61,971 nt of DNA, filler included, from Choristocarpus tenellus KU-1152 (GCA_964200185.2; 10 parts of 10 records of this genome joined end to end with filler, not necessarily neighbours in it); one strand, 5' to 3'. Positions 34,493-45,168 are shown, numbered from the whole stretch's first letter. Notes: generated from the letters alone by a model not told the origin. Program-made: numbers and translations.

Positions 34493-36638
34493 ATGCCTAT
34501 CCATTCGTGCTGGATTCAATCGCAAGGGTTAAGACTGGCGATTGCAGTGACAGCATTAGCCAGTATCGTGGGGCAAGGGGAAGGACTTCACCCTATGAAT
34601 CCTCTAGCGGGATGTGCCAGAACTATGTCAGTCCGATCTCGTTGGCTGACACATCCTAGGTCCTTTGTTTTACTGATCTCCCCTGCTGACATTGGTGGAG
34701 GAAAAGGACACTATCCTGGTGTCGCGTTGGGAGCCATGGGTCGGAGGCGAGGATCATCTGATGGGGAATTTGGTCAGGGAGTAAGACATGGGACGAGTGG
34801 AAGGGGAAGGGGCGAGGGTGGGCCATCCCACAGACGGGATAGTTATGATGGAAGACGGAGTAGTGGTGGACGTACCCGGAGAGATGGCATCATTCCCAGT
34901 GGCCAAGGTGGAGGTTTCCGGAGAGGGGAAGGTAGTGTTGGTGGTCAAAGTCGGAAGGGGGGGGTCTACGGCGGGAGACGGGAAACATTCGAAACTCGAA
35001 GAAACGTTGATGACAGTGGTCGGGTTCATAGGGAATCATCCAATGGTCGAGGGGGTAGAGGAACTTACCGGGGCGAGAGGAAGTTCGTCGGCAGTGGTCG
35101 TAGTAGTGATGGAAGGGGGAGGAAAAGTGGACGGGGTGGTGCGTATGCGGGAGACGTGTCAAGGTTTGACTCGGGACAGCGCGCTGGTACTCTTGGTGGA
35201 GCGCGCCGCTCCTCTTCAAGAGAATGGAGCACTGAAGGCAATGATGATCATTCCTTCAAAAATAATATGGACTACGATTATGACTCTTCTCTCAGCCTTG
35301 GTGACGAGGCCGAGGGAGAAGAGATCGACCCAATGTACAAGCCGGCTTCTGGTTGGATGAAAGATGAGCTTTGTGAGTGTCACTCCTCACTCGCCATTCC
35401 TCATCAAATTCTTCAATAATCCATGGCTCAATGGCTATCAAATATCCATTTTTCGGACCCTCTTCTCCGATAGGCTGTGAAGCCCGTCACTCATGCAAAC
35501 AAATTTTGCCTCACCTGCACTCCCCCCCTGCCACCAGCAACCTTCCAGGGTCAGTCATCGGCAGAGGAACAGTTGGAGGAGGTGAACTCAAATGTTGACA
35601 ACGTCTATGGCATCAACCCTGTGCTCAATGCCCTTCAGAGCAACCGTCGTGAGGTGCTGATGCTGTATGTCCAGGATGGTCTAAACCCAGCCAACAAGAA
35701 GGATAGAGCTGCAGCAGATCAAATACATGACATTGTGCGGGAGAATGATATCACGTAAGCACTCTTGTCCCTGCATACCCTTGTACAGACATTTCTTAAA
35801 CCTCAGCTAAATTGGAGCCCTTTAATAACTGTTAAGACTGTGCAGTTCTCAGTCAAATGCCCCCCCTCACCCTTCAAGAGGATGAACCCAAGACATATTT
35901 TGTGGGTTGAATTCCTAAATGATGAAGTTTCCTTCTCACAGAGTTATTTTTTGCTTTTTCCCATTTCACAGGACCACGATCATGGACAAGGGCTATCTGA
36001 ACACCCTCTGTGGTAATAGGCCCCACCAGGGATTTGTTCTCAAAGCAAAACCGCTCACCTTTGAGCCCATCATCTGCCTCGATGGTCCAGAGGAAGGGGA
36101 TATCGCTGAGGGGACATCAGGGGAAAGTGTGGGAACTGACTCAAGGGCAGAGCAGGTGTGGCTGGCCCTGGATGAGGTGACAGACCCACAAAACTTTGGT
36201 GCGCTGCTCAGGTCTGCTCACTTTTTTGGGGCAACAGGAGTGGTGGTATGCTCAAAAAATTCGGCGTCGCTCACTGCCACGGTAAGCAAGGCAAGTGCAG
36301 GAGCAATGGAGACAATGACAGTGCACTCTACCAAAAATATGATGCGCTTTCTGAAGAGTAGTCGAGAGAATGGTTGGCGCATCATTGGTACAGCCATCAG
36401 TGAGCGTTCAACAGCACTTGAGGAAATAGAGCCCCGGGCGGCGCCAACAATAGTTGTCCTTGGTAATGAGGGTTATGGATTGAGGACAAATGTTGTTCGG
36501 GAATGTGATGTGTTGGTAGAGATCGAGAAGTTCTCCAGTCCTGGAGCTACTTCATCCACGGTAGACTCGCTCAATGTCAGTGTCACTGGTGGAGTTATGC
36601 TCTTCCATCTTTTGTCAGGCAAGGCAAGATCGCCATAG
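34493..36638 (+). CDS. MRM1: SpoU-family organellar rRNA 2'-O-methyltransferase, MRM1/RlmB-like (exons 34493-35372, 35538-35754, 35972-36638)
   Basis: Phase-compatible splices; VYGINPV, HQG, LALDEVTDPQNFGALLRSAHFFG, VSKASAGAME, VLGNEGYGL, VDSLNVSV. Start codon uncertain. Confidence 0.9.
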
Positions 36639-38360
36639 ACCTGACCATTGGGTGTACTGTGGTATCTGCACCTTACGCACCCTTCACAGATCACCCCCAA
36701 AGAGACGGTAAATTCTGTCTCATGTAATGTTGTGGATTGTACTTGGTAGATCCCTAAATGTATCTCACACACTTTTGGGTGTTCATCAATTTCCTTTTAT
36801 TGATCTATAATGAAAGCATTGTCCAAGAGGGAAATGATACGTACTTTCTCGTTATAACCTGACCAAGGTACAGATCTCAAAGGGTTACACATTACTTCAT
36901 AGCTCTTGAGGATGGAGTTTCACTTGCCTGTGGGAAGATGGTAAATAGTGTAGGTGCAATGATATTTATAATAGTGTGGTGACAAAAGGTTAGGTACTCC
37001 TAAGCATCTGCTCTTTTACTTGATGCAAGATTTTAGATTTTGATTAGCATCAAACTACAGACATTTTCACTTTCTCAATGTGGTTCCAGTTGAAAATAGA
37101 GCAACTGCCATCTTGCCGGTGTTCTGCATGGTGCTAGCATGGGGATCACTTTGGCATACCAACTCAAAGTGCGTCCATAGTCGAGCAGACTATTAATTAG
37201 TGATTGTGAAACCTTTGCATCATTGACACTTGACAGGTTCTTGTATTTCCACAGACTTAACAAGATAACTTTACCGCCTCATCATTTCATAACCTTATCA
37301 TACACAACATCCCACTCTTCAACCCAACCTTCCTACAAATATAGTTATCGTTCACTGACATGCTATATTCTCAAGTCCATCCACTACTCTCAACTCTTGT
37401 TCCCAGCTTGAGCACTGTCTGTCAACTCAATTTCCTGTGAGTTTGACTATGGGTACTATGAGGGCAATAAATTACTGACCAATTTTGGATTGCACATTAT
37501 GTCTTCAAGAATTATCTTCTCATCTTAAACATAGCAGGAGGGCAAGGAGGTCAAATGAACATTATCAACCTCCACCCGTTAATGCTACCACATACTCATT
37601 AAGTGCGCACTGAACTTTGTTATTATACCTGTTCTTCACTTTGTAGATGGATTGGCAAGCTTTGATACTCTTAACTGTTTCTCACTTGATAGATGGATTG
37701 GAAAAATAACCTCACATTAGTATGCTTTTCAGCAAACAAAGAGTCTACATCTCCTTGTACACCATAACTCGGTCACCATTGACCTACTCTTTGATACTGT
37801 TGCTGTAGTTCTTCAACACTAAACCAGAGTGAAATTGATCAAGCAGAGTAAAAAGGTGCTTGCCACTTCAGAAGAGTTTAACTACCTCTTCTATGATGCT
37901 CGGAAGTAGTAAATCAAGCCTGCAAATATTTTGCTGGATGCTACAATACAGTTCTATATCAACGCTTGATTGGCATTAGGTGACATGGAGGGACGTGTTG
38001 CACACAAGGGAGAGGAATAAAGAAAAACCTAAATACATACATCAGCTGGAGTAACAACAGATGCCATGCACTGCAACATTCACCTCTCACAAGAGCAGCA
38101 CTACCTCTAGTGGCAAGAGGAAAGTGAGAAGGAGTAAACCCTTTGCTCCGGTGTTCTCATTAAAAGAAAAAAAAAGAAACTTGTTGTGCTCTCAATAAAA
38201 GAGTGTTCCATGTCAGGCCACGGATGCAACACAGATTCGATCGCAGCAACTGTATCCTTCCAGAAAGGGTGCAGTGCACACCTCAAGCACTGTCGAATAC
38301 TTCCTGCGATAGTCCTAAGTCATAAATCTTATGTGCAGCAACCAGGTGCCTGATGCATCA

Positions 38361-40046
38361 TCACACCCATGCCTCAATGATGCTGTATCCAATCAAGATC
38401 TCACTGTTCACCTGAAAACACTGCACAAGGGAGGGTGTTGTGTATCATTCCCAGGTCCCACACTGAGAGAAAGCATCACAGAGAGTCGTGCTTCAGATCA
38501 ACAGGGGGAGAACCCCAGCCTTGCCACCGAAACAAGCATTCCAAGCACTGGTGCAGGTGCAGGAATAAGAGATTCACATACACCCATTTACCGATGGCTA
38601 AACTGAGCATAGATTAGGATGCATCCAACGCGAAATCCTATTACGGATGGAAAGCAGAAAATGTGGCACAATAGAATACCAACTCCCTAAGAGGGAAATA
38701 AACTCACCTGGTATAGATTGGAGAGACTTTGGTCAGAGCTCGGTTCAAAAGAATTGTTACAGTAAAGAAACTAGTTGCCGCAGGTTGAGATACAGCAGTT
38801 GAAGTTAACCATGAGGTGGACAGAGAGAAAGGAATAATCTAGTTAAATCAACGACATCCATAGTGAAGGAATATTGTACGAAATGCGTATTCTTGATTGC
38901 ACCTATGTATTCAGTTACTAGACTTGGTCAGTACAGGTTGCTCTTATTATGAGGGGTTATATTTTTTGTGCTGTGCAACTGAGTAACCATGCTGTGCCGA
39001 TACTTGATTCTTCTTTGTGAGTCAAGGTGCTTGAAAGACAGCAGTGTAGTGTGTACTACTTCTGAGTATATGCTATGTTGTACTTGGAAATGAGAGAAAC
39101 AAGGACAATTAAAATGGGCGGATTCCATACTTCATAAAGAAGTCATTGTCTCTCTAGGACAAAGCCCTGAACACCCACAAGTCAACGTAAGTGCAACAAA
39201 ACGTATACAAATGCTTTAAAGTACTCATCTGATCATAATGTGACATCTTGGAAAAGGAGCTGAACCCTTCAACTCTGTCATAAAATTCATGCAAACAAGT
39301 TCAAGCAAAACACGATGTACATGATAGCAAATGGTTAAGTGACAATGCCGTGTATTACAAGTACTGCGCCCCTTTCATCTCACCAGGGGTGTGCCTTCCG
39401 AAAGCTGCAACTGGGTCCGAAGAGAAGCCTGTAGCTGCAAGAGTTCAAAGAGGGGCAAGGACCATCAAACGTCAGTGAGGTTGGACGAGACATGGGGTTA
39501 CCTAACAAAGTCTAGAAAAAGATGGAAGACCAAAAGTTCAAGATAAGCATAATAAATCTTAAATGGACACCTGACCCTTGTATTCTTCTAGAGTCTTGAT
39601 ATTGGAGTTGACCAATTTGTGAAGCAATTGCAGAGTCCAGAAGAGGCACAACCCTTCTGAGGAAAGGAGCAAAAAGATACGACATGGGCCCCCTACGCGC
39701 ACTATATAAAGCGATGATGTGATGAGGCTTGAGCTACACGCTTCCTTGCAGTAATTACCTCAAAGCAAGTCCATGAGCTAGGCACCAAGAACTTCGTCTT
39801 CCTCAAGATGGGGGCGTTGGCAATGGGTTTGAAGTGCACCCTGACTGAGGATCAGTCAGGAAGAGGAAGGTAGAAGGAAAGGGATCGATTAATCAAGGCA
39901 CTGTCAGTCGTGATAGAGAGACTGCTAAGGCGCCAAGACACTAAAGTGCTGGAAGCAGACCTTTCTCAGGGACAGGAGGCAATGATTCAGGTCCAGAATG
40001 TGGGAGGGGAGTTTCGATTGTCTTCGATTCAGCAGGATCACGTTCC
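38361..40046 (-). CDS. ATG12: Ubiquitin-like autophagy protein ATG12 (exons 40046-39961, 39844-39759, 39434-39384, 38770-38708, 38420-38361; start possibly split AT|G with AT at 40174-40173)
   Basis: Five phase-compatible GT-AG exons give ...PEKVRVHFKPIANAPILRKTKFLVPSSWTCFELQASLRTQLQLSEGTPLFLYCNNSFEPSSDQSLSNLYQCFQVNSEILIGYSIIEAWV*, matching the ATG12 pattern APILK..KF / LF.Y.N..F.P..D / LY.CF / Y....AW. Confidence 0.93.
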
Positions 40047-40493
40047 CTGCCATTGCAGAATGGGTTGAGTGTAGATGACGATGACACAAAAAAGGCGAAG
40101 ACGCTCGTCAAGAGTGCTGTATTGGAAAAACTGCCTTATCTGAATAACAAGGTGGGGATTTCAGTAGGGTACATTTCGGAGGTAGTGGAAAGCGCAAGGC
40201 ATTGGCTCGAAATTAAAAAACATTCTGAAGGCAAGCAAACGAAATAAAATAGTAGCTGTGGATGGCGAAAGCGATCCTCCATCCTCACATTCAAATGTCG
40301 AGGTCGGTTGGAGGATTGGAGGATGCCTACCTCAACCTACTTTCTTGAATCCTGCGCGCTACTGGGCATCAACACTGCGCGCCACTTCTTGGGCTCACCC
40401 TTTCTTTGTAGTTACTATGTTGGGAAGGAAAGGGACAGCAGAGCACAACCGTAGGCCCAGGTACCCCATCCGTGTAGGAAGGAATTTGATCTC

Positions 40494-43400
40494 ATGTTGA
40501 AGTCGTTGATCTGGGGGTCCAGCGGGTCATCCCTGTTCGGTAAGGCAAAGCCAACTAATCTTACAAAAGTCATTTGAATTTGGATACACCATCTATTACA
40601 CTGTCCGTACTATGAAACTCTGATGCGCAGAGGACAATGGAGATACCTCTGGTACCGGAGCTGAGGCGGAGATCAATAACCGTGTAAGAGACCTTGATCA
40701 TGAAGAAGCTCTAGGCCTCGCCTTGGAATGGGGAGCAACCCAAGCCCATACTCATGGAGAGCACGCAGTTACGAAGACAGATGACCCCTTCCTAAACAAT
40801 GATCCCGAGTTTGTGCTATCCTTTGCCCAAACGACGGAAGAAAAGGGTGGATTCGATGTCCTTCCGAGACCTCTCAATACCAGACTCACCGGGAGGCACC
40901 ACAGGCTACATATGGAACACGTTCGAAGGTTGACACGGTCCATGATGGCTGCTCACGACTGTGCGGGCGTGGCCCAGGCACTTGCTACGCTTCACCTTTT
41001 GGCTGGTGGCTTCGATCCGGACGTCTACCGATATACAGTGTCAATACTCAGACGATCTGGTGATCACAAAGTGCGTGGAGACTAGCTTGCACGCTCGGTT
41101 TAGTTGAATAACCAGAGGATACAACAGGGTTGATGGAGAAGGGATGGAGAGTAGCTTCTTAGGTTCTGTTGTCTAGGTGGAATCTCAATGCAATGGTGTT
41201 TTCAATTACACGGTCTATTGCACATAGAGGTGTGCTACGAATGCAGGATGAAAACTATGCTTGGATCGTCGTTGGTTCTACTCTGCTCACGCACTGCAAA
41301 ACCGAATATCTGAGGGAGTTGCTGCTTCCTTTCCCTGACTGTCGTAAACATGCTCAGAGGACAATCATGTACTTTCGTAAGATTCTGGGGACTAGAACCC
41401 GCTTTGTTAACCAGACCATGGGTGAGGAGACAAGGGGAATCATCCGCGACTTTGTGAATTACCTGGTGGACAAACAACGGTATAGGGATGCCTTGGAAGC
41501 GTTCAAGGTGAGTATCTGCACGTGATGGTCAGGTAGTGAATGGATGGCGTGCTTCATGTATAGAAATATTTTTAATCTCCCTTGATTGTGGAATTATTTC
41601 ATCTTGTTGTATTCCCGGTACCAATTACCAACACATTGTACTTCCTTCACACAACACCTCACCTGTTGCAGGGGATCTTCGAGAGTTCTACCCACTACCT
41701 CAGGAGAGACCCTCAGCTACAAGCTCATGCTGCAATCATTCGCTTGGGAGTGTCCTTGCTTGAAAGTGCCTATGCAACCAAGGGTCTAGATCAAGAGGTT
41801 AGGAAGCAGGCAGAGGAGAGATCAGAAGACGAGGATGAGCAAGATGAAAGAGGAAAGGAAACAACAGAGATTGAGCTAGTGCGTATCCCTGACCTTCACA
41901 GGCCCCTACCCCTTGTAGAACCCCTGCAAGAATGCCTGAAAGGCGGTCCCGGGGGGCATGAACGTGCTCGCCTGCATGCCATTGAAGCTCAGAAACTGCT
42001 CTCAATGGCAGCATCAGCCAACCCTGGAGATACAAGTGTGGCAGTCTACAAAGCCATCCTTGCAGCAGCATCAGGTAATGTGGAAACTGGTGTATCTGAC
42101 CTAGAGAATTTTGTAGTCCGAAACCCTGGCCCCAGCAATATCAAGGCACGAGCCACCCTTGTGGGTCTCCTTGAGTTGGAGAGAGAGGGAAAGATTGGGA
42201 GATCACATAAGTGTGATGTGGGTGGAGGAAAGAGTGATCAGAACCAGCATCAGGAATTCACATCAGCCAGGCTTGTCTGTGCCCTCAAGGATTGGCTGGT
42301 GGCGGATCCTCTTGAGGCACAGGCTGCTCTAGGTCTCGAAGAGCTTTTTTGGTCCAGTGGGTCCAACGATGTTATTGATGAGGAATGGCTGATTAAAGCG
42401 CTGGTCTCGCAGATTGAGGTCCATTGCACCAGTCAGAACACGGCCGCATTAGCCTTGAAGCTGTGGGAAGCACTGGCACGTGTGCTGGGACCACTACGGG
42501 TTCAGGATTCCCCGACACCACTGGCAGCAGTGCCAAGGCCAGCAAGGTGCAAGGAGGAGAGCGCGGAAGGGGGGGATGTACCAGGTGAAGGTCTGTCTGC
42601 CTGTAGTGGGGCAAAAATGGTTCTGCTTGACCGACTGCCCCTGGCTGGAACAGTGCATGCCGCACTGTATGGAAATGATCGTCCCTGGGGGGATACGGAC
42701 CTTGATGCTGCTGCTGCTGCTGCTGCACCAATCAAAGTCACCTCTGGCCTGCCAAGTGTGCCTGTGACTCATCCGTGGTTGGAGGGTTTGGACCTTGGTT
42801 GGTGGAGTGATGTGTTCTTTGGTGCAGAAGAGGTCTTGTCGAGGGCGAGCAGGAATAGAATAATCGATGGGAGGGACAAGGGCAAAGGTAGAGGCAGCGA
42901 ATGCATTAGTCAGGATGGCTTTGACGATGAACCTTGGTGCAGGTGGGTGTCATGGGGTGAGTTTGTGCACGTACTCTCAAGGGTTGTTGTGTGTAAGCAG
43001 GAGGACGAAGGAGAAGAATAAGGCCTCCTCAGGCACGTATTAAGTTCTGGCAAGTGAGGTCTAGCAGGCTGATACATGGAAAGGCAAATTTGGGTGCTGG
43101 GATGTGATGTGATCTGTCTGAACACAACCTGGAAGAGTAAAACATGAGCATCATTTGTTACTGGGAGACTATCATCCTTCTTTTGTGCACTCCCTTCCCC
43201 CACTTTCTTCCCCCCTCCCCCCCCCAAACCTACTCTATAGTTCAATTTTGTTTGCTAACATCATGCTACTCCCGTTATGCACACCTCTGAAGCGAGGACG
43301 AGGATTGTGTAGTTGGTGATGTTGCTGAAGCTATAGGTCATCGCACATGCCTAGCAGAGGGTGGCGATGGTGGCCTTCTTTACTACTTTCCCCCAGAGGA

Positions 43401-43600
43401 TGGTGGTGCAGGCCCAGATCTGCGTCGAGGACAGGATGGGGAGAGAGGTGGGGAGGGGCGAGCAAGAGCTCAAAAGAGGAGAAGGGAAGAATCGAGCAAT
43501 GGTGATGGAGGGAAAGGAGAAGAAGGGAGAGGTGGACTGTCCCCAGGAGGAAGAGGAAGAGGAGGAAACAGTGGTCTCTCTCTAGAGAGGAAGAAGAGGA
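40494..43600 (+). CDS. Unidentified helical/TPR-like protein, multi-exon
   Basis: Exons ~40494-40539, 40631-41070, ~41300-41507 and 41672-~43000 (long open frame), plus later segments; weak unverified resemblance to Pol I factor TAF1A/Rrn11. Confidence 0.6.
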
Positions 43601-45168
43601 AGCGAGAGAAGAAGGAGGAGAAAAGGAGGAGAAAGGAGGAGAGGAAGAAACGGAAGGAGGAGGAGGAGGAGAGAAAAAAAAAAAGGAAGGAGAAAAAAAG
43701 GAAGCGCGGTGTGGAGGGGAAAGAGTTGCCAAGAACAGACAAAGAACAGGCAGAGGTGAAGCGGGATGGAGGGGGGGACCTCTGTACAGGGATGGGGACA
43801 GAGCCGGGATCTATGGACTCGGTCACGCAGCGACTGCTGATGGGAGTCAAGAAAGTGGAAGAGATGGAAAGTACTGGAGGCGCATCTGCAGCGACTGTGA
43901 GTCGTACGGTGTTGTTGCTCGCAGCCTTTCCTCCACTCCCCTGCCCCCTTTTCCTCCCTGTTTTGCTAACCCTAACCCTGATCCTAACCTCGATCCTATG
44001 CGTTTTTGTTGAGGGGAGGAGGATTTATTTCTTTGTGGACGCAGTACGTTTTGGATTACTCCAGATTGTACCTTCTTTTCAAAGTACTCAAGTCCTGTAA
44101 GTGAATACGGCGAGGTGGCCTGCCTGCATCGTGGTGTTATTTTTTGTGTTGTTGTCGTTGTTTTGTTTTTATTATTATTATTATTATTATTTATTTATTT
44201 TTAGGTTACTCTTGACATGGTGTCGTACGATTCTCGATCGGGGGGGTATTTCAAGCTCATTCCCCTAACCCTTTTGCACAGGGACTGCTCATGTGCTGAA
44301 TTGGGTTGTATATCGAAGAATCCAATCAGATCAGATCGGCACAGAGCAGCAGTGTGGTGCCTCCTTCTGTTGACAAGGGGGGAAACAACAACAACAACAA
44401 AAGCCTACTTCTTGCGTGATGTCCTTTCTTATCTCTCTCTCCTTGTCGCTGGGCAGAAAGGTGAGCGAGAGGCTGGAGAAGCTGCACATGTGATTGTCAG
44501 CAAAAATTTAAAAGAATCGGAGGCCATACTGACCAGGGCCTCGACAGGTCCACTTCCGGGTGGTGGCGAGAAAAGCAGTAAGGGTGACGGTGAGAGGAAA
44601 AACTTCGAGCGAGGTTAAGTAACTGACGTACTTAACCTTTTAACCTCTTACGAGGAGTGCTCTCTTCTTTTCTTTTCTTTTCTTTTCAAGGCATGGTGTG
44701 CATTGTAAATGACCCCAAGAAGAGGAGTACATAAGGATTGTTGAAGGTAGCGAGTGGGTTTTGTACGCCTTGGTGTGGCATGGTTGCGCAGGATGACTGC
44801 TGAGAGGCAAGGAGAACCTTCTCGCTGGGACGAGTTGTTTTGTTGGCGTGGAAGGAGTGTCGACTCCAAGTCAGAGCTTCTCTTTTTTGTTTTCTTGCTC
44901 GTGTCGTTGAGGCCCCTCTAGGTTGGCTTTCTTCAAATCATCTCAAGGTCATCAAGGTATAGAAGCAGTCAAGGGTCTCTTGAAATTATGTTTACGATGC
45001 AAGATAGGTGAAACAGTCCGCCTGCCTGGAATACACCGGCTCTTTCATCTCTAGTCACCCAAAGTCGCCAGACTGTGACTGCTCTCACCCAATTATGGCT
45101 CTCTTGCCCCCCACCTCCTTGAATGCTGTTCCTTGGCTTGCCCCCGGTTGTGTTGAGCATTTGTCCCT

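What the first reader, a model, noticed from the sequence alone, without database searches (positions are those of the whole stretch)
38358..40046. ATG12 without the C-terminal glycine: candidate non-covalent ATG12-ATG5 system
Seen: the last exon reads GAG GCA TGG GTG TGA TGA = E-A-W-V-stop-stop, while the rest of the gene is intact with clean splice phases. Established: canonical ATG12 ends AWG, and that Gly is activated by ATG7/ATG10 and joined to ATG5; Gly-less ATG12 that binds ATG5 non-covalently is known in Plasmodium, Toxoplasma and Komagataella. Inference: this alga has independently lost ATG12 conjugation, or this is a non-conjugating paralog. A GT follows the Trp codon, but by eye I found no downstream AG|GGN-stop exon that would restore a terminal Gly.
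Basis: partly seen in the sequence, partly recalled or inferred. Interest (0 to 1): 0.8.

Follow-up and report, generated by a model that had tools for sequence, protein, structure and literature searches.

The report
Brown-algal ATG12 ending in valine
This expressed ATG12 autophagy gene really ends in valine instead of the glycine needed for covalent attachment to ATG5, but every brown alga sampled shares this, so it adds one lineage to an already known pattern of conjugation loss.

Summary
On the minus strand the last exon reads GAG GCA TGG GTG TGA TGA (38375-38358). Contigs of three runs show no differing letter. One run (X3) behaves like RNA: it shows the three downstream introns spliced, and one unbroken contig runs from the last exon through both stops into a ~785-nt 3'UTR, so nothing splices after TGG.

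This is the syntenic ATG12 ortholog, not a paralog. It is under strong purifying selection (dN/dS 0.055 against Discosporangium).

The valine is not private to this alga. Nine other brown-algal species in five orders end EAWV, from genomic DNA in five and from protein models in four. The Val codon varies synonymously (GTG/GTA/GTT) and the stop codon varies too. Tribonema, diatoms, a dictyochophyte, oomycetes and fungi keep the glycine (131 of 156 fetched relatives).

The best reading is one GGN>GTN change in the brown-algal stem. The protein then most likely works in a non-covalent ATG12-ATG5 complex, as in Apicomplexa, Komagataella and probably Chara.

That mechanism is inferred. ATG10 and the ATG5 lysine could not be examined. 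The start codon and first exon are unresolved.

Such losses are reported at least 16 times among 94 eukaryotes, so this is a new member of a known kind.

The parts
38364..38420 (-). Last coding exon of ATG12, 19 codons, CFQVNSEILIGYSIIEAWV. The terminal Val codon GTG is at 38366-38364.
   Evidence: Pfam APG12 profile 68-86 of 87. X3 joint 38420>38708. 15 of 19 residues match the Discosporangium last exon.
38358..38363 (-). Tandem stop codons TGA TGA directly after the Val codon.
   Evidence: No differing letters in X1, X2 or X3 contigs.
37574..38357 (-). 3'UTR (~785 nt), contiguous with the last exon in RNA-like contigs.
   Evidence: X3 record 14 covers 37574-38423 unbroken at depth 469. No joint leaves 38367.
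38708..38770 (-). Coding exon 4, FLYCNNSFEPSSDQSLSNLYQ.
   Evidence: Pfam APG12 profile 48-68. X3 joints on both sides.
39384..39434 (-). Coding exon 3, LQASLRTQLQLSEGTPL.
   Evidence: X3 joints 38770>39384 and 39434>39759. Matches Discosporangium and other brown algae.
39759..39844 (-). Coding exon 2, (V)RVHFKPIANAPILRKTKFLVPSSWTCFE. Its first two bases complete a codon begun in exon 1.
   Evidence: Pfam APG12 profile 2-25. 28 of 28 residues match Discosporangium. X3 joint at its 3' end. Its 5' border is inferred.
39961..40046 (-). Putative coding exon 1, the disordered N-terminus (...ERDPAESKTIETPLPHSGPESLPPVPEK). It starts after the acceptor cag|GGAA, ends AAAG|gt and has no in-frame ATG.
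   Evidence: A 'PP..PEK|V' motif lies at a phase-1 donor, as in relatives. The same cag|GGAA acceptor occurs in Discosporangium. It is not supported by X3, which has depth 0 over 39973-40425 and no joint at 39844. Inference only.
40289..40400 (-). Speculative 5'UTR exon ending ...GAAT|gtgagg, so that AT + G of exon 1 would form a split start codon. Its upper end is unknown.
   Evidence: Direct reading. Discosporangium has an analogous GAGAGAT|GTAATG upstream of its acceptor. No read support.
35477..37252 (+). Convergent neighbour, a SpoU-type rRNA methyltransferase. This is the syntenic marker of orthology.
   Evidence: ORFs. PF00588/PF08032 homologs. The same convergent neighbour occurs in Ectocarpus, Ascophyllum and Scytosiphon. 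The X3 contig ends at 37252.

Best explanation
This is the single syntenic ATG12 ortholog of an early-branching brown alga. Its closest relative in the data is Discosporangium mesarthrocarpum.

In the stem lineage of brown algae, one base change (GGN to GTN) turned the C-terminal glycine into valine. The stop codon stayed in place, and the valine has been kept by selection ever since.

A ubiquitin-like protein without a C-terminal Gly cannot be adenylated by ATG7, passed to ATG10 or joined by isopeptide bond to the ATG5 lysine. The protein therefore most likely assembles with ATG5 non-covalently, and that complex acts as the E3 for ATG8 lipidation. This is what has been shown for Toxoplasma, Plasmodium and Komagataella phaffii.

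Shown here: the sequence, its expression, the absence of a Gly-restoring splice, orthology, purifying selection, and lineage-wide conservation of Val.

Inferred: loss of conjugation, non-covalent ATG5 binding, and loss or redundancy of ATG10.
For: - Sequence and reads: GTG TGA TGA is present, no run shows a variant, an unbroken RNA-like contig crosses the stops, and no downstream Gly-stop exon exists.
- Domain match: the APG12 match of the window exon and of brown-algal orthologs stops at profile position 86 of 87. Tribonema reaches 87 of 87.
- Position of the Val: the Ectocarpus ortholog aligns with Arabidopsis ATG12b (1wz3) and human ATG12 (4gdk) up to their penultimate residue, so Val occupies exactly the Gly position.
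- Codon variation: the terminal codon is GTG in the window, Discosporangium, Ascophyllum and Ectocarpus, GTA in Laminaria and GTT in Scytosiphon. Stops are TGA, TAA or TAG, and the 3' flanks are unrelated.
- Outgroups: Tribonema has GGA TAG.
- Survey: of 156 fetched ATG12-like proteins, 131 end in [WYF]G, 9 end in EAWV (all brown algae) and 1 ends in EAWA.
- Tree: the Val-ending sequences form one clade (92/99). The window groups with Discosporangium (97/95), and Tribonema lies outside.
- Selection: dN/dS is 0.055 over 85 codons, with dS 1.25.
- Synteny: the same convergent SpoU methyltransferase lies downstream.
- Literature: non-covalent ATG12-ATG5 in Gly-less, ATG10-less species (PMC11764061, PMC12005411 and PMC6652269, all citing Pang 2019).
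Against: - No ATG10 or ATG5 sequence could be examined, so loss of the E2 and the state of the acceptor Lys are unknown.
- No protein-level evidence exists for brown algae.
- The strict conservation of Val and of the stop position is not predicted by simple relaxation after loss of conjugation. It hints at a role for the tail that I cannot specify.
- The 5' end of the gene is unresolved: there is no in-frame ATG in exon 1, and X3 has depth 0 over 39973-40425.
- X1-X3 come from one study. X3 is not on record as RNA, and contigs drop rare isoforms.
Confidence: 0.7

Rival explanations
1. ATG12 in brown algae is conjugation-dead and no longer part of the ATG8 E3. It is retained for another role, such as ATG3 binding or a non-autophagic function, and ATG8 lipidation runs without an ATG12-ATG5 complex.
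For: The Gly is absent. A whole apicomplexan lineage, the piroplasms, has dispensed with the ATG12 system altogether (PMC11764061). ATG16 is said to be absent from non-Archaeplastida algae (PMC11449223).
Against: Strong purifying selection acts over the whole ubiquitin-like domain (dN/dS 0.055). The family's conserved core motifs are retained (alignment). Experimentally studied Gly-less ATG12s still bind ATG5 (literature above).
Confidence: 0.15
2. A canonical Gly-ending ATG12 paralog exists elsewhere in the genome, and this gene is a divergent, non-conjugating duplicate.
For: I could not search this genome itself. Protein searches list only the best hits and depend on shared words.
Against: The gene is in the conserved syntenic position. 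In some searches every named brown-algal hit is the Val type or a truncated model, while Gly-type proteins at 36-50% identity from fungi, diatoms and oomycetes were readily found.
Confidence: 0.05
3. A Gly terminus is restored after transcription, by a minor splice isoform using TGG|GT, by RNA editing GUG>GGG, or by proteolytic processing.
For: GT follows the Trp codon. Contigs drop rare variants. Leishmania ATG12 is reported to need C-terminal processing (PMC10104450). In Discosporangium a 15-nt GT..AG is followed by GGA TAA.
Against: No joint leaves 38367, and the X3 contig shows no differing letter. No AG|GGN-stop lies in the 3'UTR. The 3' flanks are not conserved between species, and the Discosporangium pattern is absent from the window and far too short for an intron. 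There is no Gly anywhere in the last 10 residues that processing could expose.
Confidence: 0.04
4. Sequencing or assembly error: the true codon is GGG.
For: X1-X3 are from one study, and X1 may be the assembly's own data.
Against: The same Val terminus occurs in the independent genome assemblies of five other brown algae, with three different Val codons.
Confidence: 0.01

Closest known systems
Non-covalent ATG12-ATG5 systems of Apicomplexa (Toxoplasma, Plasmodium) and Komagataella phaffii (Pang et al. 2019, as cited in PMC11764061, PMC12005411 and PMC6652269)
   Same: ATG12 lacks the C-terminal Gly but is otherwise a conserved, selected ubiquitin-like protein. The trait is fixed across a lineage.
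   Different: The origin is independent: other stramenopiles keep the Gly. Here the Gly position is kept and filled by a strictly conserved Val, with the stop codon unmoved. ATG10 absence and ATG5 binding are not shown.
Chara braunii ATG12 (Norizuki et al. 2019, PMC6652269)
   Same: A multicellular photosynthetic organism whose ATG12 has no C-terminal Gly. The finding is bioinformatic, and a non-covalent complex was proposed.
   Different: In Chara the loss looks recent and patchy, since Nitella keeps the Gly, and ATG10 was searched for and not found. In brown algae the change is shared by all five sampled orders, including an early-branching lineage, and ATG10 was not examined here.
Canonical ATG12 (human 4gdk, Arabidopsis ATG12b 1wz3, yeast 3w1s)
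   Same: The same domain over its whole length, with the same ...AW-x-stop ending.
   Different: The last residue is Val, not Gly, so ATG7/ATG10-dependent isopeptide formation is not expected.
Survey of ATG conjugation systems (Zhang et al. 2022, Autophagy 18:2969), known to me only through citations
   Same: It reports loss of covalent ATG12 conjugation at least 16 times among 94 eukaryotes (PMC11764061).
   Different: I could not read it, so I do not know whether a brown alga is among its cases. No held paper mentions the brown-algal Val terminus.

Membership tests
ATG12 (Pfam PF04110, ubiquitin-like autophagy protein) | APG12 domain over the full length | tested here: met
   Window exons hit profile positions 2-25, 48-68 and 68-86 in order. 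Each exon alone scores below the 22.8-bit cutoff (18.6, 22.2 and 14.0 bits). Brown-algal orthologs score 85-92 bits. The joined window protein was not submitted to any search tool.
ATG12 (Pfam PF04110, ubiquitin-like autophagy protein) | Orthology to recognised ATG12 genes | tested here: met
   The convergent SpoU neighbour is conserved. The tree places the window with Discosporangium inside the brown-algal ATG12 clade.
ATG12 (Pfam PF04110, ubiquitin-like autophagy protein) | C-terminal glycine used for activation and conjugation | tested here: not met
   GTG (Val) is followed by TGA TGA. Profile position 87 is unmatched.
ATG12 (Pfam PF04110, ubiquitin-like autophagy protein) | Ubiquitin-like fold | not tested
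   Sequence evidence only: the Ectocarpus ortholog aligns end to end with solved ATG12 chains 1wz3 and 4gdk. No structure was predicted.
Non-covalent ATG12-ATG5 system | ATG12 without C-terminal Gly, fixed in the lineage | tested here: met
   The window alga plus 9 other brown-algal species (10 taxa, five orders) end in EAWV, with synonymous Val codons.
Non-covalent ATG12-ATG5 system | ATG10 (E2) absent from the genome | not testable with these tools
   No ATG10 query sequence was available by reference. Only this 14.6-kb piece of the genome is in hand.
Non-covalent ATG12-ATG5 system | ATG5 present and bound to ATG12 without an isopeptide bond | not testable with these tools
   This needs the ATG5 sequence, a complex model or biochemistry. 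PMC11449223 lists ATG5 among the genes present in most algal lineages.
Non-covalent ATG12-ATG5 system | The gene remains functional (expressed, under selection) | tested here: met
   X3 spliced contigs at depth ~1000-1270. dN/dS 0.055.

The most novel reading that the evidence does not exclude
All brown algae, a major complex multicellular lineage, run autophagy with a non-covalent ATG12-ATG5 complex that arose from a single Gly-to-Val substitution in their common ancestor. The strictly conserved terminal Val would have acquired a structural role of its own at the ATG5 interface. This would not yet have been described for the group.
Probability: 0.3. Interest if true: 0.45.

Novelty: new member of a known kind. 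Interest (0 to 1): 0.3.

Why it matters
- It dates a loss of covalent ATG12 conjugation to the base of the brown algae and shows it is independent of the alveolate, yeast and charophyte cases. Sister stramenopiles keep the Gly.
- The Gly position is not simply lost. It is replaced by a Val kept under selection through synonymous codon turnover, which suggests the C-terminal tail still matters in a non-covalent complex.
- Ectocarpus is genetically tractable, so the prediction can be tested directly: no ATG12-ATG5 conjugate band, but ATG12-dependent ATG8 lipidation.
- Algal autophagy reviews that assume conserved ATG12/ATG5 conjugation residues (PMC3407069, PMC11449223) would not hold for brown algae.
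- Many public brown-algal ATG12 gene models are wrong: some read through introns and some are fused to TEN1.

Tried and rejected
- The look-up of sequencing runs found no run on record as RNA. X3 is treated as RNA-like only because of its joints and its exon/intron depth contrast.
- phmmer of single exons against PDB sequences gave nothing. An ortholog was used instead.
- Zhang 2022, Shemi 2015 and Pang 2019 are not held, so I could not check whether brown algae are already listed.
- The 'ATG10' hit in a Saccharina paper was ATG101.
- A TEN1 profile search of the window piece and of the Discosporangium locus was negative.
- A search for a conserved upstream coding exon between the window and Discosporangium found only low-complexity proline matches.
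- The Sphacelaria last exon was not found on its contig.
- Rejected: the ATG at 40053-40051 as start codon. It is out of frame with the conserved PEK|V junction and would terminate early in exon 2.
- Rejected: the 15-nt GT..AG plus GGA TAA in Discosporangium as a Gly-restoring intron. It is too short and absent from the window.
- The joined spliced protein was sent to no search tool. Searches were exon by exon, by reference. Joining was done only inside scripts, for dN/dS and the tree.

Full report
**What is in the sequence**

The gene lies on the minus strand. The last exon (38420-38364) encodes CFQVNSEILIGYSIIEAWV and is followed by TGA TGA. The text GAG GCA TGG GTG TGA TGA occupies 38375-38358.

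Three exons, each submitted by reference, hit Pfam APG12 (PF04110) in collinear order. Exon 2 (39844-39759) matches profile positions 2-25, exon 4 (38770-38708) matches 48-68 and exon 5 matches 68-86 of 87. The only unmatched end position is the glycine. Exon 3 is 39434-39384.

The joined spliced protein was sent to no search tool. All searches were exon by exon, and joining was done only inside scripts.

**Reads**

No run is on record as RNA. Four runs of one study hold the stretch.

Contigs of X1 (whole stretch, possibly the assembly's own data), X2 (38235-38591) and X3 show no other letters and no indels.

X3 behaves like a transcriptome.
- It has joints 38420>38708, 38770>39384 and 39434>39759. 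All have CT..AC ends, which is GT..AG on the gene strand, at depth 1007-1270.
- Introns sit at about 50-100 depth, and the intergenic DNA sits at 1-2.
- One 850-nt X3 contig (depth 469) runs unbroken over 37574-38423. It goes from the acceptor of the last exon through the Val codon and both stops into a ~785-nt 3'UTR.
- No joint leaves 38367.

A scan of the 3'UTR found no AG|GGN-stop. The one near-match, at 36683, lies beyond the transcript end in the neighbouring gene.

There is one caveat: contigs can drop rare isoforms.

**Who it is**

The convergent downstream neighbour is a SpoU-type rRNA methyltransferase (ORFs). Its best relatives, at 57-75% identity, include Scytosiphon promiscuus. Dictyochophytes and diatoms follow at about 50%.

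A phmmer search with exon 2 against 1.84 billion representatives gave 15 hits. The best, at 97% identity, is from Discosporangium mesarthrocarpum.

In the Discosporangium contig the same exons are present. Over 85 codons the two species share 74 residues, with dS 1.25, dN 0.069 and dN/dS 0.055. The window therefore comes from a different species, an early-branching brown alga. The gene is under strong purifying selection.

**The key result: the valine is lineage-wide**

Full-length relatives end the same way. The species are Laminaria digitata, Undaria pinnatifida, Scytosiphon promiscuus, Cladosiphon okamuranus, Ascophyllum nodosum, Ectocarpus siliculosus, E. fasciculatus and two other Ectocarpus species. 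All end in EAWV.

At DNA level the codon after TGG and the stop that follows are:

| Taxon | Codon after TGG | Stop |
|---|---|---|
| Window | GTG | TGA |
| Discosporangium | GTG | TGA |
| Ascophyllum | GTG | TAA |
| Ectocarpus | GTG | TAG |
| Laminaria | GTA | TAG |
| Scytosiphon | GTT | TAG |
| Tribonema minus (Xanthophyceae) | GGA (Gly) | TAG |
| Tribonema-like metagenome contig | GCA (Ala) | TGA |

The 3' flanks of these genes are unrelated to each other.

Of 156 ATG12-like proteins fetched, 131 end in [WYF]G. These include diatoms, a dictyochophyte, oomycetes and fungi. Nine end in EAWV, all from brown algae, and one ends in EAWA. The rest are truncated or intron-read-through models.

Pfam alignments of brown-algal orthologs stop at position 86 of 87, while Tribonema reaches 87 of 87. 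An Ectocarpus ortholog aligns with Arabidopsis ATG12b (1wz3) and human ATG12 (4gdk) up to their penultimate residue. The Val therefore occupies the Gly position exactly.

In a maximum-likelihood tree the Val-ending sequences form one clade (92/99). The window groups with Discosporangium (97/95), sister to the other brown algae. Tribonema and the Ala-ending sequence lie outside.

ATG12 is followed by the same convergent SpoU gene in Ectocarpus, Ascophyllum and Scytosiphon. This is the ortholog, not a paralog.

The simplest history is one GGN>GTN change in the brown-algal stem, kept since then through synonymous turnover.

**Mechanism**

Established knowledge says the terminal Gly carboxylate of ATG12 is adenylated and thioesterified by ATG7. 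It is then passed to ATG10 and joined to a Lys of ATG5. A Val terminus is not expected to support this.

In Toxoplasma, Plasmodium and Komagataella phaffii, which lack ATG10 and the Gly, ATG12 binds ATG5 non-covalently and still supports autophagy. This is the work of Pang 2019, as described in PMC11764061, PMC12005411 and PMC6652269.

By analogy, and given the strong selection on the whole domain, I take brown-algal ATG12 to work in a non-covalent ATG12-ATG5 E3. This step is inferred. I had no ATG10 or ATG5 sequence by reference and hold only 14.6 kb of this genome.

The strict conservation of Val and of the stop position goes beyond what mere relaxation predicts. It suggests the tail still contacts a partner.

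**Known or new**

Chara braunii ATG12 lacks the Gly, and ATG10 was not found there (PMC6652269). The same paper says Pang 2019 reported ATG10 loss in lineages including SAR.

PMC11764061 cites Zhang 2022 for at least 16 independent losses among 94 eukaryotes.

Neither Pang 2019 nor Zhang 2022 is held. No held paper mentions the brown-algal terminus. One algal survey and one review instead state that the ATG12/ATG5 conjugation residues are conserved in algae (PMC3407069, PMC11449223).

I therefore file this as a new member of a known kind. It may already be tabulated in a paper I could not read.

**Unresolved: the 5' end**

The first coding exon I infer (40046-39961) ends ...PPVPEK at a phase-1 donor, as in relatives. 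It begins after the acceptor cag|GGAA, which is also present in Discosporangium. It has no in-frame ATG.

The ATG at 40053 is out of frame and would lie inside the intron.

A possible solution is a 5'UTR exon ending in AT, which would give a split start codon. The window has GAAT|gtgagg at 40289/40288, and Discosporangium has GAGAGAT|GTAATG.

X3 gives no support for this exon. Its depth is 0 over 39973-40425, and there is no joint at 39844. The tool warns that a hole proves nothing. I could not lay reads a second time.

Noticed in passing
L004, L005 and L006; proteins P0128, P0137, P0138, P0140, P0141: In Ectocarpus, Undaria, Scytosiphon and Cladosiphon the public gene models fuse a TEN1 domain (PF15490, CST telomere complex) to ATG12 in one ORF. 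In Ascophyllum TEN1 is a separate gene whose stop lies only about 10 nt before the ATG12 start codon. This may be model merging, read-through or a true bicistronic or fusion transcript. No TEN1 was found in the window piece or in the Discosporangium locus.
   Followed up: partly
L002 4001-4621 (P0134, JGI metagenome 3300081568): An ATG12 from an uncultured relative of Tribonema, with the same PRA1 neighbour as Tribonema in L007, ends EAWA (GCA TGA). This is apparently a second, independent Gly loss within the Phaeophyceae-Xanthophyceae group.
   Followed up: partly
window 39973-40425: The RNA-like run X3 has depth exactly 0 over three whole bins, covering the inferred exon 1 and the promoter region. 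Exons 2-5 sit at ~1000. X4 has 151-nt pieces at 39974-40124 and 40128-40278. This is unexplained. The start codon of the gene is therefore not established.
   Followed up: partly
L001 4806-4830: In Discosporangium, TGG is followed by a 15-nt GT..AG (gtgtgagcattccag) and then GGA TAA, which mimics a Gly-restoring mini-intron. It is too short to be an intron and absent from the window, so it is probably coincidence.
   Followed up: yes
P0121, P0122, P0124, P0126, P0127, P0130, P0133: Many public brown-algal ATG12 gene models, including those named for Discosporangium (P0121) and Sphacelaria (P0122), read through an intron and lose the true C-terminus. Automated surveys would miss or mis-score ATG12 in these genomes.
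   Followed up: partly
window 36911 (run X2): One low-depth X2 contig carries a 28-nt loose end GGGTTAGGGTTAGGG..., a TTAGGG-type telomere-like repeat, next to the 3' region of the SpoU gene. It is probably a chimeric or low-coverage contig.
   Followed up: no
window 40426-45000 (+): A divergent plus-strand gene starts about 380 bp from ATG12 exon 1. X3 shows a GT..AG intron at 40539-40629. Long ORFs lie at 40723-41085 and 41582-43021, and their function was not examined. Proline/serine- and glutamate-rich low-complexity ORFs lie at 43331-43850.
   Followed up: no
alignment A1; window 39786-39776: Brown-algal ATG12, including the window sequence, carries a lineage-specific Cys in the motif SSWTC. 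Tribonema has Phe at this position, and human and Arabidopsis have Ile or Phe. The position is probably buried, and its significance is unknown.
   Followed up: no
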